DNA of 64,000 nucleotides from Gracilinanus agilis (taxonomy: Eukaryota): NCBI RefSeq assembly GCF_016433145.1, contig NC_058131.1:570491453-570555452 (forward strand). The letters are read 5' to 3'. The translations under genes were made by a program, and so were the position numbers. Position 1 is the first letter of the stretch; each line of letters starts with the position of its first letter. Of the stretch, positions 42,081-64,000 are shown piece after piece. The notes under the pieces are model-generated. The model was given only the letters and a program-made list of their open reading frames with translations. It made no database searches and was not told where the DNA came from.

Positions 42081-42419
42081 TCTGGGATTTTACGGATAGA
42101 TGGGAAATTCCCAAGCTGAAATTCCTTTCACTAATGCAGCTCAGCCATATGAATCACCTGGTAGGGAAAGAGTGCACTGAGAGATTAAATAACTTGGCCA
42201 TAGTCTCACTGTGAGTATGTAAATGAAACAGGACTTGAACCCAGGTCTTCCTGACTCCAAGGTCAGCTCTCTAGCTCCTAATAACTTATTTAGGACTTGG
42301 AGGTGTACAAAACACTTTATATACATTATTTCATTTGATTCTCACAACCACTTTGTAAAGAAAAAGATATTACTATCCCCATTTTACAGATGACAAAACT
42401 GAGGTTCAGAGATATTAAT

Positions 42420-42615
42420 TTTTTAACTCTTACCTTCCATCTTAGAACCAATACTGTGCATTAGTTCCAAGACAGAAGAGTGGTAAGGGATAGGCAATGG
42501 GGATTGAGTGACTTGCCCAGGGCCACACAGCTAGAAAGTGTCTGAGGCCAGATTTGAACCCAGAACCTCCCGTCTATAGGCTGACTCTCGATACACTGAG
42601 CTACCCAGCTGCTCC
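42420..42615 (-). mobile_element. SINE1_Mdo
   Basis: Full reverse copy. Confidence 0.9.
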
Positions 42616-42747
42616 CCAGAGATATTAATTTGCCTAGAGCGCACAGAGCTAGTTAGTGGGGGAGGAACTAAACCCAAGTCTCCCTAATTCCATATCCAGT
42701 GCCCTCACCATACCACACCGTGCTGCCTCTTGATATACATAGGATTT

Positions 42748-42940
42748 AGGGGCAGTTAAATAACATAATAGATAGAGCACCAGGCTTGGAGTAGAGAGGA
42801 CTTGGGCTCAAATGTGGCTTCAGATACTTACTAACTGTGTGGCCCTGGGCAAGTCACTTAACCCTCATTGGGTTAGCCCGTGCCACTCTTCTAACTCACA
42901 ATTGATACTAAGATGGAAGGAAAGGGTTAAAATAAAAGAG
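42748..42940 (+). mobile_element. SINE1_Mdo-related SINE
   Basis: ggggcagttaaa..gatagagcaccaggc..ccctgggcaagtcacttaaccc..gaaagggttaaaa. Confidence 0.82.
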
Positions 42941-43032
42941 CTATCTATGGGATTTAAATTCAGAGCTATTTTCCCCCCTAATGAATACTCCTCCCCTCCC
43001 CTGCCCCCAAACAAAAAAGTTCTCTTACTCAC

Positions 43033-43082
43033 CTAAAGAGAAATCTGGCAGAACCTGAAAAAATCATCTTCCTCACAACCAT
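43033..43082 (-). CDS. Candidate alternative first coding exon of SMAD3 (MVVRKMIFSGSARFLF-R)
   Basis: Strong-context ATG (atcATGG) at 43082, 16 codons plus AG, donor AG|GTGAGT at 43032-43027, phase matches exon 2. No expression evidence. Confidence 0.4.
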
Positions 43083-46000
43083 GATTTCACACAGTTTATC
43101 TGGTGAAGAACGTCAATATTTGTTCACTTCCCAATGTAAACATGTTTTATTACCAGCCTCTTAGTCATTCTGGTTTTTTGCTTTCTTCAACAAAGCAGAG
43201 ATGCTCCCTCTGGCCCTGAGCTGGCCCACTTGCCCTCCTTTTCCCAGGGTACGTTCCCAGCCTCTTGCCTCCCTGACCCTAATCAGGTTTTAATGAATCG
43301 GTAACGGGTGAATCACTTCCTGTGGACAGTTGCACGTTTGGGAAGTAGGCTTCTTTCTTTCTTTTTTCATACTCAAGAGTCTCACGGTGTTTCTGGGTTA
43401 GATAAATGGAACGGGGAAATGATGAGAAAGAGCAATCTCTTTCTATCAAAACAAACCTTGAAGTTTCCACAAAAGAATTAATAGAATATCATATTCCTAT
43501 GAAGGAGTTGGGGAGAAGGAGAAAAGAAGAGAGAGAAGAAAGAGATGAACAGGCGGCTGAGGAGTTTGTACATGAATCGTACTGCTCAGACTTTCTTAAT
43601 TATGAGTTACTTGCTGTAGCAGAGAAACCATTTCAGAAACATTATTAATGTAAAAGCAAACAGGTCACCTCGGTGCCTGGAGAGCTGAGACGTAATATTT
43701 GAGAATAAGAGTTCACTAAAGTTAATATTTTACAGCCCCAGAAGCTGATGAATTCTAGTGAAAAGGAGAATTCTGAGTCGACACCCATAGAGGAAATAAA
43801 AGTTTAATTCCTATTGGATGACCCTCTCTCATCACAGAGTGTTCCTGCAGCCTTCAGTGATCAAGAATTCTTTAGTTTAAATACAACCAATACTGAAATC
43901 CCTTGGATTGGTATGGCAAGGTGGAGGGACAGGACTTGGGCTCTGGAAGAACTGGGTCAGAAGCCCTGCCTGGGACACACACCGGCTATGGGATCATGGG
44001 CAAACCACACAGCATCCCTTATAACATGGTGATTGTATCATCTATTGGACCTACTTCACTAGCTCGGTGTCAGGTTATTTATATAAAGTATCATTGCTGC
44101 TGTTATTCCATTAGAATGTAAATCGCTTGGGGGCCAGAACAGCTTTTAAATGTTTTTTTTTTTCCTTTTTTAAAAAAACCCTTACCTTCTGTCCTAGAAT
44201 TGATACTAAGTATTGGTACCAAGGCAGAAGAGTGGTAAGGGCTGGGCAATGGGGATTAGGTGACTTGTCCAGGGTCACCCAGCTAGGAGGTGTCCAAGGC
44301 CACATTTTAACTCGGGTGGAATGGAAACCTAGATTTTGGCAAGGAGGTTGGCGGAGGGGAGGGAAAGATACCTGATGAGCACAAATAATTTCATTAGAGG
44401 TGAGGAGGATTGAAGCCCAGATAGTTGTATTACACATTGAACAAGTCATTTGATCTTTCTGGGCCTCCAATCCCATAGTGAGCTTTGAATATCTCAATGT
44501 CTATATCCATTGGTGTCAAACTCAGAACTGTATTATCTTTTTATTTATTTTGTTAAACATTCCAATAATATAACCTAGAACCAAAAACGCTAAGGAGTTT
44601 CGCTGGCTGTTGGAGTCAAGAATGATACCTCTCGTCCTAATCACTCATCTGTGACCTGGATTGCTGACTAACTTTTCATCCCAATTAGGTTTGAATTCTT
44701 GAAAGGCAAAGATGATTCTTGCCCACCTCTTTATACCCCCTCACAAGACCAGGACAGTACTTTGCACAGACAGGCTATTCAGTAACTATTTGTTCACTGG
44801 TTGCCTTAAATAGCCTTCTGGAAGGGACCTTAGTGGTAGAATAATTGTAAAGATAACTAAACATATGTATAGTGCTTTATAGTTCACAAAGTGCTTTCAC
44901 ATACATTGTCTGATGGTGGAAATAGCCTGGACTAGAAAATCAAGACACTAGGCTGCTGGAGCAACACGGTGTATCTCGTAGAGTGTTAGCCTTAGGGTCC
45001 TGGAACACCCAAGTTCAAGTCCTACCTTTGACATATACTAATCTGTTGAAAGTTAGAACCAGAGTCCAAAATTGTTCTCGTAGTCTGGAATAATGGGCAA
45101 AGCGTATGAATTCTTCAACTATTTGAAGGATTCAATTTATTCTGTATGACACAAGAAGGCAAAAAAAAAATTGCAATGGGAGGGGTTATAGAGAGACATA
45201 TTTTTGTATTATATGAGGAAATTTTTCCTAATAATGAAAGTTGCCCTAAAGTTAAATGGAATGTTTTGAGAAGTTGTGAGAGTTTAATAATAAGAACTAG
45301 CATTTTTATAGCACTTTTTAAGTTTGAAATATTATTTCATGGGCAACTGGGTGGCTCAGTGGATAGAGTACCAGGCCTGGAGTCAAGAGGAGCTGGATCC
45401 AAATCTGGCCTCTGACCCTTCCTAGCTGTGTGACCCTGGCCAAGTCAATTAAACCCCATTGCCTAGCCCTTGCCCTTCTGTCTTAGAGTTGTGTTTAGGA
45501 CAGAGAGTGGGAAGGAGGAAGGAAGGAAATATAGTTTCGGTTGATCCTCCTGACATCCATATGAGTTTCTCCATCACTTAGAAAGTGATAGTCTTCAAGT
45601 GTCTAAAAATGATCACTTGTTAGAGAGGCTAGAAAGGGAATAAGTATTTTTCAGGATAACCTCTGTAGCTCTTCCCCAACTCTGAGATTCAGTGAACTGT
45701 ATTAAATCATGACCTGAAGGGGATCTCAGAGGTCTTTGAGTCTAATTCCCTCATTTTACAGATAAGAAAACTGAGGCCAGATAAGTCAAGTGATTTGCCC
45801 AGGGTCACCCAGCTATTAAGTATCTGAGATAGGAGTCAAATCCAGGTCTTCCTGATGCCAATCCCAGTGCTCTACCCATTCAACTACATAGCCTCACAGA
45901 CAGGATAATTTGTTTCACAGAACAAGCCCCAGTCAGCAACATTTTATGGCAACAGGGGTGCTGGCCATGCCCCAGCCCCTCCCAATACCCACTCAGCAGA

Positions 46001-46752
46001 CAACAAAGAAGTTGTATACAACAGAAGCCACAAAGTGTTTCCAGGACCTAAAGATTCCCTCCATGCCACACTTGGGAGACATTCTCCTTCTTTCCATCCC
46101 AGGAACGCCCTCAGCTTTCTGCTCCTCTGTCCAGTGATGAGAAAGCCGTATACTGGCTAAGCTCCAGACAATAACACCCCCATTGTATGTTGCAATGTAA
46201 TAGTGCAGCTGGAACTGGAGTCAGGGGACTTAGATTCAAATGCCAGCTCTTCCTCCTTCCTTGCAGCCCGTGGGACCTTAGGAAAATCCTTTCATTTTTT
46301 TTCCTGGGTCTCAGTTTCCTCATCTGTAAAATCTGTAAAATTAACTCTGAGGTTCCTTCTAACTCTAAATTTCTGATTCAGGATGCAAGAGAAACACCAA
46401 TTCATTTTTCTGCTTTTTGTAATTCTTTTTGTATCTCTAGGAGAAAACTTGATTCTAATCTCTTTGACCAGTCATCCCACATCCCAAGGCATGCCATAAT
46501 CCTAGACCAGCCTTTCCCTCACCTCTCATAATTCTGTAAAAGAAGCCTTCTCACATACATGGTGAGGCTTGTCATCATTAGAACTTGTCACAGTAAGAAG
46601 GAACTTCAGGAGACATCTAAGACCATCATTTCACAGATGAAAAAACTGAGGCCCAGAGAAGTTGGGACTTGCTTTCTCCTCTGTAAAGCCTTCCCACATT
46701 ATTGTGAGAGACAGAGAGACAGACAGAGACAGAGGGGAAAGGGAGGAGGAAG

Positions 46753-47214
46753 NNNNNNNNNNNNNNNNNNNNNNNNNNNNNNNNNNNNNNNNNNNNNNNN
46801 NNNNNNNNNNNNNNNNNNNNNNNNNNNNNNNNNNNNNNNNNNNNNNNNNNNNNNNNNNNNNNNNNNNNNNNNNNNNNNNNNNNNNNNNNNNNNNNNNNNN
46901 NNNNNNNNNNNNNNNNNNNNNNNNNNNNNNNNNNNNNNNNNNNNNNNNNNNNNNNNNNNNNNNNNNNNNNNNNNNNNNNNNNNNNNNNNNNNNNNNNNNN
47001 NNNNNNNNNNNNNNNNNNNNNNNNNNNNNNNNNNNNNNNNNNNNNNNNNNNNNNNNNNNNNNNNNNNNNNNNNNNNNNNNNNNNNNNNNNNNNNNNNNNN
47101 NNNNNNNNNNNNNNNNNNNNNNNNNNNNNNNNNNNNNNNNNNNNNNNNNNNNNNNNNNNNNNNNNNNNNNNNNNNNNNNNNNNNNNNNNNNNNNNNNNNN
47201 NNNNNNNNNNNNNN
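46753..47214. other. Assembly gap (N run) in a purine-rich/(GA)n tract
   Basis: Run of n flanked by gaga repeats. Confidence 1.

Positions 47215-47304
<90 letters not shown>
47215..47304. repeat. (GA)n microsatellite
   Basis: Perfect run after the gap. Confidence 0.97.
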
Positions 47305-47307
<3 letters not shown>

Positions 47308-48179
47308 TCCTCTTTTCTTCGTCCTCTCCACTTAACAGCCAGGTGAGATAAGCATAGTTACTCTCTTCAACAATTTGCTCCCCAAATGCACTTCCTTTGA
47401 CAAAAATGAATCACACTTGAATTTACCTACTTATTTATTCCATAGATAACAGAACAAATTAATGTTAGAAAGCCTCCAGCACCTCAGATAGATTCTCTCC
47501 AGATGCTAGATAGAAAGTTCTGGATGAGAAATACATGGGAAGAAAAGCCATGAGGGGGTTGCCAGATGTACAGGTGAATAAAGTGCCCTATACTAGTGAA
47601 ATCCCAGATACAAAGAATATTAGGTGTTCACCACATGTTTGCTTCACAGGTCCCTGTGCCTGTTTACCCATGTCACTGTGATCCAACCTTGATGGTAAGT
47701 TGTAGGAGGCAAGGATCTCAGCTCTAAATGTCTGCAGCAGAATCTGAATCCCCCAACTCCCAATTTTAGCACTCGATCACTTCATCATATTGCCCCTCAA
47801 AGAAATAATGATCTCTATTAACCTCCCCTCATTGCAGCAGTGGGGGAAATCAACCTATACACATGCCCCCACCCCTACCCTCACATATACATATATTAAA
47901 TATACTTTTAAACTAGGATCTGAATGTATTGGTTAGTTTTGTTCAATCAATCAACAAGCATTTCTTGAGCATTTACTAGTTGTAGGACACTATGCTAAGC
48001 ACCTAGGATACAAAGACAAGCATGAAACAGTTCCTGCCCTCAAGAAGTTTGTTTTATAATAAGGGGGATACCATGTATATACAGAATATATGTAAAATAT
48101 ATATGCAAAATAGTCCTGGGTTCAAATCTGCCCTCAGATACTTCCTAGCTGTCTAGGCAAGTCATTTAACCCATGTTGT

Positions 48180-54560: not shown

Positions 54561-55580
54561 CCAAATCAATTTGAGGAGCCTCCAATTTGAATTCAACCCA
54601 CATAAATGCAATTTTGGTTCTGAACCACTGGTTTCATTTTTTTTTCTGTTTGATGTTTTTAAAGGGTGAGGTTGAAGGTGGTAGAGGTCCTGATGACATC
54701 TGATCAGGACTTTGACTGGCAGCCTTTTGATTGGCAGCTGCAGTTCCTTTAAAGGCAGCAGAAAGCCAAGGAACAGAAGCCAAAGTCATATTTTAGACTT
54801 GATGTATTCAAAGTTAAAAATCTGTCCCACAATACATCTGCTATCAGTTTATCTTCTGCTCTACATACATACTGCTTCATGCTCATGTCCCTCTGTGTGC
54901 TTCCTTATCTTTCATTTAATGCAATAAGCAACACTGGACTGCTGACCCAGTGTTCCCACCAAGACTGAAGTCATTGTTCCGGAGAAGGTTTGTGACCAGG
55001 ATCTGAGGTCAAGGCAAACCCCACTTTCTGACACCCATTCCCTCACCTCAAGTTGTTCACGATCTATGTACACTGCACCCCCACTCCATTACATTAGTTC
55101 AACATTCCTGCATATAGCCAGAAGAACATTTAAGAAACTCAACAGCTGGGGACAATTTATTTTACATCTATTTTAATTTAATGGTACAGGCTGCTCTGAG
55201 AGCATGCTGTGAGATTAAAAATTTCCTCCTTTGACCAGCTTCTGCCAAACACTCCCCCAAATCCACCTCTCTGATAGTGTTTTCTCAGAAATAGACAGGC
55301 ATCTCGGCAGTCCTGTAAGATGGCTCAAGTGCTTGCTTTCTCAATGAAAGGAAAAAAGAAGAAAAGGAAGAAAAAGAATTTGAAACTCAAAATTTTAAAA
55401 AAACAATTAAAAATAGTTTTTACATGTAACTGGAAAAAATAAAATAAAACGAAAAAATTTAAAGATGGCTCAAGTGATTCAAGAAGGCAGAGGAAAACCG
55501 AAATACATATGATTTAGCCAAAAAGCCCACCTTCTCCCACCCTGGGCTTTCCCTTTATCCATCTTTTGATAACTTTACTG

Positions 55581-62404: not shown

Positions 62405-64000
62405 CACTCAAAGGCTGGGTGGGCTAAGTGGCTTGTCAGGCTTCAGATTTCAGCTTAGTTATTTTTTTAGATAGGTGAGATTTTTCTGTCCCCTTCCTAC
62501 ATTTTCCTTTTTTCATATATTTCCATTTTAATTAAAATTACATTGTTAAGAGCTACTAAAAAGACTCCTGACTTGAGTTAATTTTATAATGGCAACCACA
62601 TTATTTTAATTAATATTACCCTTAATAATTTTACTTTCATTTATTACACTAGTTAACTGGGATGTCATGCTTGTCCATTACAGGGTCTTTGAGGTTGAAC
62701 CCTCCAAAATGTTTCTTACATCTCCAGAGCTTACCTCACAATATCCATATGTTTGAAATCCTTCCCCATTCTTTAAGGATTTAATATTTCCAATACCAGC
62801 TCCTTGCCGAAACCTTCTCTCTTCTCCTCACTTAGCTCCTTCTTTATCCCTTCTCATCCTGAGTAAGTACATCTCCTAAGCACTTATCAGATTCTAATTT
62901 ATATGATTTATAATTTATATAATTCATAATCTAATTTATATAATTTTTAAATATTCTCATTCATGTTGTGGTGATTTGTGTCCCTGTCTTGTCCCTAATA
63001 AGTGCCATGATAGGGAGGACGGTTTTATTCATCTCATAATTCCCAGGACACAGCACAGAAACTTATTTAGGGTGCTCCATAAACCTGGTTAATGGAACTG
63101 AATTAGACTGAATCCCAGGTACAGTAGTAGGGCAGGACCTAGAGCAAATACAGGTAAAAAAAACAGGCTGCTACCAAGACTACCGATTCATTTCATAAAG
63201 CCTCTAAGAGATAATATGTAGAAGTCAGAGAGAGAACACACTGAAGGGGGAGGAGGGAACCTATCATTCAGGTTAATGTAAGAGGAAAAGGTATGAAATT
63301 GAGTAAAGGGGTTAGCAAAAGACCACCAAAAACAAAACAAAACATGAAAATTAGGCAGATTCATTCCTGAAGGAAAAATGCATTTCAACCCATTCACTAA
63401 CATAGCCTTAAAAATCATGTAGAAGCATCAAATCTGGCATTATGAAAAACAAAAAACAACAACAAAAACCATACCTCATAACAAATTGTTGTGAAAATAA
63501 ATACTATCATAGTAGCAAGGAGTATTTTTTCTCCTACAGCTTTCCTTTGCTCACTTAGCTCTGCATCAATTTGCTTGAGAGGCTTTCTACAACCAGATTT
63601 CTAAAGACTTCTGAAAGATGGTCAATAATTAGCTCTGCCTAAATTCGCCACATTGATGGATTTGCATAAGATCAGCATGAGAGGAAGTACAGTGTAGAAG
63701 AGAAAGCCAGTCTTGATGCCAAGAAGGCCTGGGCCAACTCTTGCCTTTAACCCAAGATGACCATCTGACCTCAGACAAGCCATTTCACTCTCAATGCTCT
63801 AGGCAACTCTCTAAGACTATAAACTGTGAAGGAGGTATCCATCTGCATTAATGGGGTGATTTTCCATTGACTTGGGAGTTTCCTATACCAATAAAATTAT
63901 AAGTCTAACAAGGCTCATAAGGCATAGAGGTGGCTGAGTGGATAGAATGCTGGGCCTTGACTCAGAGTTCAAATTCAACCTCAGGCACTTACTTGCTTTG

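What the first reader, a model, noticed from the sequence alone, without database searches (positions are those of the whole stretch)
43027..43330. Candidate alternative promoter and first coding exon giving SMAD3 a new 17-residue N-terminus
Seen on the minus strand: in-frame TGA (43115-43113), then gaaatcATGG (A at -3, G at +4; 43082) and ATG GTT GTG AGG AAG ATG ATT TTT TCA GGT TCT GCC AGA TTT CTC TTT AG|GTGAGT. The split codon AG|A joins exon 2 in frame: [27 protein letters not shown]... A second good-context ATG is at 43067; a 15-codon uORF (43143-43096) lies just upstream. Further upstream is non-repeat sequence with TTAGTCA and an overlapping TGAATCA/CACTTCCTGT (AP-1-like/ETS, 43309-43323). 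Recalled: human SMAD3 has an isoform with a short alternative N-terminus from an intron-1 exon joined to exon 2. Inference: the product would lack the exon-1 basic NLS and one MH1 zinc-ligand Cys but keep the DNA-contacting beta-hairpin. The peptide does not resemble the human alternative N-terminus as I recall it, so it may be lineage-specific.
Basis: partly seen in the sequence, partly recalled or inferred. Interest (0 to 1): 0.7.

Follow-up and report, generated by a model that had tools for sequence, protein, structure and literature searches.

The report
Unproven alternative SMAD3 first exon
Inside the first intron of an opossum's SMAD3 gene there is a start codon, a short open frame and a strong splice signal that could give the protein a new beginning, but such an arrangement is expected by chance fairly often and I could get no evidence that it is used.

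Summary
On the minus strand there is an in-frame TGA, then ATG 43082 (A at -3, G at +4), 16 codons, AG|GTGAGT (last exon base 43033), and phase-compatible joining to SMAD3 exon 2 (18014-17821, MH1 residues 70-133).

The arrangement is not beyond chance. The same 46 kb of intron holds 11 phase-compatible ATG-plus-donor candidates, and 14.5% of simulated 46 kb sequences give one as good. There is no CpG island and no canonical TATA box. The AP-1-like and ETS motifs occur at background frequency. Two uORFs precede the ATG.

Expression could not be tested. The run index shows only that three small runs of unknown kind, from the study of the full holder, hold 24-30% of the words of 42900-43400. That fits an exon of about 150 nt, but also a repeat or reduced-representation DNA. 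Protein, contig, metagenome and Rfam searches were blank but insensitive.

My reading is that this is most likely a silent pseudo-exon (about 0.55). A real alternative first exon of the human variant-2 type has about 0.2.

The parts
43309..43323 (-). Overlapping ETS consensus (ACAGGAAGTG) and imperfect AP-1-like heptamer (TGATTCA)
   Evidence: CAGGAAGT occurs 3 times in the window and TGATTCA 26 times on both strands, which is background frequency.
43161..43167 (-). Imperfect AP-1-like heptamer TGACTAA
   Evidence: It occurs 7 times in the window on both strands.
43124..43168 (-).
43145..43151 (-). AATAAAA, the only TATA-like string near the candidate. It is equally a poly(A)-signal hexamer.
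   Evidence: AATAAA occurs 107 times in the window, so this is weak evidence.
43096..43143 (-). Upstream ORF of 15 codons plus stop (MFTLGSEQILTFFTR*)
43100..43101 (-). AG of a possible 3' splice site (ttcttcaccAG|A) that would make a 67-nt internal exon at 43099-43033
   Evidence: The pyrimidine tract is weak (10 of 18, against 15 of 18 at exon 2). Joining after exon 1 would read AGA TAA, an immediate stop.
43113..43115 (-). In-frame TGA upstream of the ATG
43033..43082 (-). Candidate coding part: ATG (A at -3, G at +4), second ATG at 43067, 16 codons plus the first two bases (AG) of a split codon
43027..43032 (-). GTGAGT donor. The full site is TAG|GTGAGT.
   Evidence: Approximate PWM score 10.86, against 4.81 for the real exon 2 donor.
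42989..43008 (-). Cluster of G runs 25-45 nt into the would-be intron, a type of sequence known to help nearby donors
   Evidence: The sequence is. The enhancer role is inference from general knowledge and was not tested.
42750..42960 (-). Marsupial SINE copy just downstream of the donor. Its head lies inside the stretch used for the run search.
   Evidence: There are more than 20 related copies in the window at 68-86% identity.
17821..18014 (-). SMAD3 exon 2 (R|[10 protein letters not shown]...VETP), MH1 residues 70-133. The acceptor cag is at 18017-18015.
   Evidence: Pfam MH1, 1.1e-28; SMAD3 MH1 chains 1OZJ and 5OD6, about 2e-43.

Best explanation
This is most likely a pseudo-exon. A start codon in good context, a 16-codon open frame and a consensus 5' splice site happen to lie together in SMAD3 intron 1 in the phase that fits exon 2. 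They are not used to make a stable coding mRNA or a protein. The letters are shown. The absence of use is inferred from base rates and from the lack of promoter signals, and was not observed directly.
For: The same 46 kb of intron holds 11 ATG-plus-donor (score >=8) arrangements in the right phase, including 62735 (GAG|GTAAGC with AnnATGG) and 46523 (GAG|GTGAGG). In simulations, 14.5% of composition-matched 46 kb sequences give one at least as good. One AGGTRAGT per strand is what chance gives. There is no CpG island within 39 kb: CpG o/e is 0.09-0.51 around the site, and the only island is at 2651-3050. There is no TATAAA, only AATAAAA. ETS and AP-1-like strings occur at background counts. 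Two uORFs lie in front of the ATG unless transcription starts within 60 nt of it. No short public protein joins this peptide to exon 2. From general knowledge, intronic pseudo-exons far outnumber real exons in long mammalian introns.
Against: Three small runs of the study that holds the whole stretch carry 24-30% of its sampled words. That is far more than the roughly 2% a random DNA sample of that size would hold, and it fits an exon of about 150 nt. The donor is much stronger than the real exon 2 donor and is followed by G runs. Human and cattle SMAD3 do use alternative first exons (and my own knowledge of RefSeq). None of my negative searches was sensitive enough to count as absence.
Confidence: 0.55

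Rival explanations
1. It is a real alternative first exon with its own non-CpG promoter, spliced from 43033 to exon 2 at 18014. Translation from ATG 43082 (or 43067) would give a SMAD3 of about 374 aa. It would begin MVVRKMIFSGSARFLFR and lack residues 1-68: MH1 helices 1-3, the KKLKK import signal and the zinc ligand Cys64. Such a protein would probably have no folded MH1 and would behave as a linker-plus-MH2 SMAD3, like the short human isoforms.
For: Frame, Kozak context and consensus donor are all present. AATAAAA at 43151 would place a start near 43120, downstream of both uORF ATGs. There are G runs after the donor. Three small same-study runs hold 24-30% of the words. There is precedent: human variant NM_001145102 (the accession is seen; its structure is from my memory of RefSeq) and a cattle alternative-first-exon isoform.
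Against: The arrangement is at chance level. There is no CpG island or canonical core promoter. The word shares imply about 150 nt, which would put the start upstream of both uORFs. The kind of runs X22-X24 is unknown, and a repeat or RAD-type locus explains the shares equally well. No gene model or protein was found, though the search was insensitive.
Confidence: 0.2
2. It is an internal cryptic or poison exon, or part of a non-coding transcript. The donor at 43033 would be paired with the acceptor at 43101/43100 (67 nt) or at 43321/43320, and included now and then between exon 1 and exon 2. Inclusion stops the frame at once (AGA TAA) and sends the mRNA to decay. Alternatively, the stretch belongs to an intronic lncRNA on either strand.
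For: An acceptor-like ttcttcaccAG with a branch-like ttgac lies upstream. Inclusion gives an immediate stop. The word shares in X22-X24 would also fit some other transcript.
Against: The pyrimidine tract is weak (10 of 18). A 67-nt exon would hold only 3-4 sampled words, not 11-14. There is no Rfam family here. There is no direct RNA evidence.
Confidence: 0.1
3. The upstream motifs mark an intronic ETS/AP-1 enhancer of SMAD3 rather than a promoter, and the ATG and donor nearby are coincidental.
For: ACAGGAAGTG is a full ETS consensus that overlaps an AP-1-like site. From my own knowledge, human SMAD3 intron 1 holds AP-1-dependent enhancers. Open-chromatin libraries would also explain the small runs.
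Against: Both AP-1-like heptamers are imperfect, and all the motifs occur at background frequency. No conservation or chromatin data were available.
Confidence: 0.08

Closest known systems
Human SMAD3 transcript variant 2 (NM_001145102), isoform 2
   Same: It has an alternative 5' exon inside intron 1 that joins exon 2 and replaces the exon 1 residues with a short unrelated N-terminus. This architecture is from my memory of RefSeq. Only the accession's link to SMAD3 was seen here.
   Different: No homology was tested, because no human sequence was brought in. The human exon is supported by transcripts, and this one has no expression evidence.
Cattle SMAD3 alternative-first-exon isoform (novelIsoform.4948.1; bioRxiv 10.64898/2026.06.04.730050)
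   Same: It is an alternative first exon event at SMAD3, seen with long reads and under genetic control.
   Different: Its position and coding effect are not given in the text I read. It is a different lineage, and it is shown by reads whereas this one is not.
Intronic pseudo-exons and decoy splice sites
   Same: A consensus donor and an open frame lie in a long intron without promoter or conservation evidence. Eleven comparable arrangements lie in the same intron part.
   Different: This donor is unusually strong, and three small runs hold part of the stretch.
SMAD2 and SMAD3 exon 3-skipping splice variants
   Same: They are SMAD isoforms that alter the MH1 domain or the linker.
   Different: They arise by cassette-exon skipping from the normal promoter, not from a new first exon.

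Membership tests
Alternative first coding exon of SMAD3 (human variant 2 type) | ATG in an open frame that joins exon 2 in phase | tested here: met
   AG|A gives R before [10 protein letters not shown].
Alternative first coding exon of SMAD3 (human variant 2 type) | Usable 5' splice site | tested here: met
   The site is TAG|GTGAGT, with an approximate PWM score of 10.86, fifth best on the strand. This shows sequence competence only.
Alternative first coding exon of SMAD3 (human variant 2 type) | Transcripts that start here and are spliced 43033 to 18014 | not testable with these tools
The run index gives only word shares from runs of unknown kind.
Alternative first coding exon of SMAD3 (human variant 2 type) | Recognisable promoter (CpG island, or TATA box plus initiator) | tested here: inconclusive
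   There is no CpG island. Only AATAAAA at 43151 and an initiator-like TTACATT at 43139 were found.
Alternative first coding exon of SMAD3 (human variant 2 type) | Conservation of ATG, frame and donor in related species, or homology to the human exon | not testable with these tools
   No marsupial genome collection is on hand. The SMAD3 gene range exceeds what look-up of encoding contigs returns. The metagenome scan was blank.
Alternative first coding exon of SMAD3 (human variant 2 type) | A public protein or gene model with this N-terminus | tested here: inconclusive
   None of 112 short exon 2-containing proteins has ...ARFLFR before SLDGR. Only proteins of 35-112 aa could be seen.
Poison or cryptic cassette exon | Acceptor and donor flanking a short exon whose inclusion introduces a stop | tested here: inconclusive
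   There is a weak acceptor at 43101/43100. Inclusion of the 67-nt exon reads AGA TAA. No RNA evidence was available.
Intronic pseudo-exon (chance arrangement) | Frequency no higher than expected from composition | tested here: met
   Simulations give an expected 0.165 per 46 kb and 14.5% of sequences with at least one. Eleven weaker or equal candidates lie in the same intron part.

The most novel reading that the evidence does not exclude
Opossums evolved their own intron 1 promoter and 17-residue leader, unrelated in sequence to the human one. It yields an MH1-crippled SMAD3 that lacks the import signal and one zinc ligand. That would be an independent reinvention of the short-N-terminus SMAD3 isoform known from human, and would suggest that such isoforms are selected for rather than noise.
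Probability: 0.15. Interest if true: 0.4.

Novelty: not a real feature. Interest (0 to 1): 0.15.

Why it matters
If it were real, it would be one more lineage-specific alternative first exon of a TGF-beta signal transducer. The kind is already known from human and cattle SMAD3. The modest added point would be that MH1-truncated SMAD3 isoforms arose more than once. As it stands, the useful result is a calibration. In a long intron, an in-frame ATG with a consensus donor is expected by chance about once per seven such stretches. It should not be read as an exon without junction reads.

Tried and rejected
The single call was counted, so no reads were seen.
2. The look-up of encoding contigs was run with four local ORFs flanking the candidate, in the hope of fetching public contigs that cover it. 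None is on record.
3. The word search with exon 2 gave 112 short proteins. Nearly all are gene calls that read from an intron into exon 2 in other animals, and none carries the candidate N-terminus. The length window of 35-112 aa makes this insensitive.
4. A full-length SMAD3 query could only have come from the big representative search. I left that out as not justified tonight and unlikely to expose one isoform among thousands of near-identical SMAD3 entries.
5. An exact 28-mer across the donor found nothing in metagenome contigs.
6. Rfam found nothing in 42300-44500.
7. The earlier-findings search by sequence was blank.
8. I considered an LTR or other transposon origin of the promoter region. 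There is no second copy in the window and no transposon-like ORF. A family absent from this window cannot be excluded.
9. I considered reading the small shares in organisms A-D (0.04-0.13) as conservation. I rejected this as evidence. The shares are the same in runs of 27 to 2756 million letters, which points to high-copy words, probably from the SINE head at 42900-42960.

Full report
**What is in the sequence**

- An in-frame TGA lies at 43115-43113.
- ATG lies at 43082 in gaaatcATGg, and a second ATG lies at 43067.
- The frame reads MVVRKMIFSGSARFLF and is followed by AG|GTGAGT, with the last exon base at 43033.
- If the intron is not removed, the frame reads AGG TGA. The unspliced RNA therefore carries a closed 17-codon ORF.
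- The 15-codon uORF at 43143-43096 is there.

**Gene context**

The window carries SMAD3 on the minus strand.
- Exon 2 is 18014-17821 (cag|A ... CCAG|gtactg).
- Its 64 residues match Pfam MH1 at 1.1e-28.
- They match residues 70-133 of solved SMAD3 MH1 chains at about 2e-43.
- Further exons lie at 17665-17531, 15247-15173, 9642-9592 and from 179 to the window's edge.
- Exon 1 is outside the window, so 18015-64000 is part of intron 1.
- The split codon AG|A gives arginine, so the candidate joins exon 2 in phase.
- Earlier notes on this genome call it an opossum. I did not check that myself.

**Is it more than chance?** No.
- AGGTRAGT occurs once on the minus strand and twice on the plus strand. 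That is about what 64 kb gives by chance.
The site scores 10.86, fifth best on its strand. The real exon 2 donor scores 4.81.
- In 18015-64000 there are 46 donors scoring 8 or more. Eleven of them have an upstream ATG in the phase that fits exon 2, several with a good Kozak context. Examples are those ending at 62735, 55531 and 46523.
- First-order Markov simulations of the same 46 kb give a mean of 0.165 arrangements as good as this one. At least one appears in 14.5% of runs.
- A reader scanning very many windows will meet such arrangements often.

**Promoter**
- CpG o/e is 0.09-0.51 around the site. The only CpG island of the window is at 2651-3050, far downstream.
- There is no TATAAA. AATAAAA at 43151 is the only TATA-like string, and AATAAA occurs 107 times in the window.
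- The ETS consensus and the two imperfect AP-1-like heptamers occur at background counts.
- If transcription started about 30 nt below AATAAAA, near 43120, the leader would be free of upstream ATGs. Any start above 43168 would put two uORFs in front of the ATG.
- The G runs at 43008-42989, just inside the would-be intron, are of a type known to help donors. That is inference only.

**Expression**
- The run index found one run that holds all sampled words of 42900-43400. This is X21, with 3224 million letters, likely a genome data set and possibly the source of the assembly.
- Three small runs of the same study hold 0.30, 0.28 and 0.24 of the words (X22-X24, 49-83 million letters, kind unknown).
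- A random DNA sample of that size would hold about 2%. So the stretch is enriched in them.
- About 11-14 of 46 words correspond to roughly 150 nt. That would fit an exon from about 43190 to 43033.
- It would fit equally well a restriction-site or capture locus, an open-chromatin peak, or a repeat of moderate copy number.
- Runs of four other organisms hold 0.04-0.13. The share is the same in runs of 27 and of 2756 million letters. That points to high-copy words, probably from the SINE head at 42900-42960. I do not count it as conservation.
No reads were seen.
Later calls started at 42300 or higher.

**Other searches**
- Four ORFs next to the candidate are not on record as gene products in the contig collection.
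- The word search with exon 2 returned 112 proteins of 63-112 aa. Almost all are reads from an intron into exon 2 in other animals, and none has the candidate leader.
- That search cannot see a 374-aa isoform, so the blank says little.
- A 28-mer across the donor is absent from metagenome contigs.
- Rfam finds nothing in 42300-44500.
- The stretch 42940-44176 has no other copy in the window. No transposon-like ORF lies nearby.

**A further reading**
- The site ttcttcaccAG|A at 43101/43100 could serve as an acceptor for a 67-nt internal exon.
- Joined after exon 1, it would read AGA TAA, an immediate stop.
- The pyrimidine tract is weak: 10 of 18, against 15 of 18 at exon 2.

**What the protein would be**
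- The following comes from established knowledge of SMAD3 MH1 (structures 1MHD, 1OZJ and 5OD6, which are listed).
- Exon 1 encodes residues 1-68, with helices 1-3, the KKLKK import signal (40-44) and Cys64.
- Cys64 is one of the four zinc ligands, together with Cys109, Cys121 and His126.
- The hairpin residues Arg74, Gln76 and Lys81 are in exon 2.
- A domain missing half its core and a zinc ligand is unlikely to fold. The product would act as a linker-plus-MH2 SMAD3 rather than as a DNA binder.

**Comparison with what is known**
- Alternative first exons at SMAD3 are a known kind.
- Human RefSeq lists variants 2-4. The accession NM_001145102 is tied to SMAD3. Their structure is from my memory.
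- A cattle long-read study reports an alternative-first-exon isoform under genetic control.
- Known SMAD splice variants otherwise concern exon 3.
- Even if real, this would be a new member of a known kind.

**Verdict**
Its use as an exon is untested.
- My probabilities are: silent pseudo-exon about 0.55; real alternative first exon about 0.2; other transcript or cassette exon about 0.1; enhancer about 0.08.

Noticed in passing
window 2651-3050: This is the only CpG island of the window (GC 0.52-0.69, CpG o/e up to 0.96). It lies inside the SMAD3 intron between the exon at 9642-9592 and the exon that starts at 179. It could be an internal or antisense promoter.
   Followed up: no
window 62735-62769, 46523-46578, 55531-55562 (minus strand): Three further ATG-plus-strong-donor arrangements lie in the phase that fits exon 2. 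They read MGKDFKHMDIV with GAG|GTAAGC, MMTSLTMYVRRLLLQNYE with GAG|GTGAGG, and MDKGKAQGGR with AAG|GTGGGC. They are as plausible on sequence grounds as the reported one.
   Followed up: partly
window 46700-47330: The N run at 46753-47214 is flanked on both sides by a GA/TC dinucleotide repeat (the ORFs read ERERER and SLSLSL). The gap or mask therefore sits in a microsatellite. It was left untouched.
   Followed up: no
window 17821-18013 (minus strand): Opossum exon 2 reads RAMEMCEF, where the other vertebrate SMAD3 fragments returned read RAMELCEF. This is a single Leu-to-Met change in an otherwise identical MH1 segment (98% identity to the best hit).
   Followed up: partly
I worked beside them and did not examine them further.
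   Followed up: no
window 43343-43366 (minus strand): An A-rich (GAAA)n-like run could be the tail of an old retroposon just upstream of the ETS/AP-1-like motifs.
   Followed up: no
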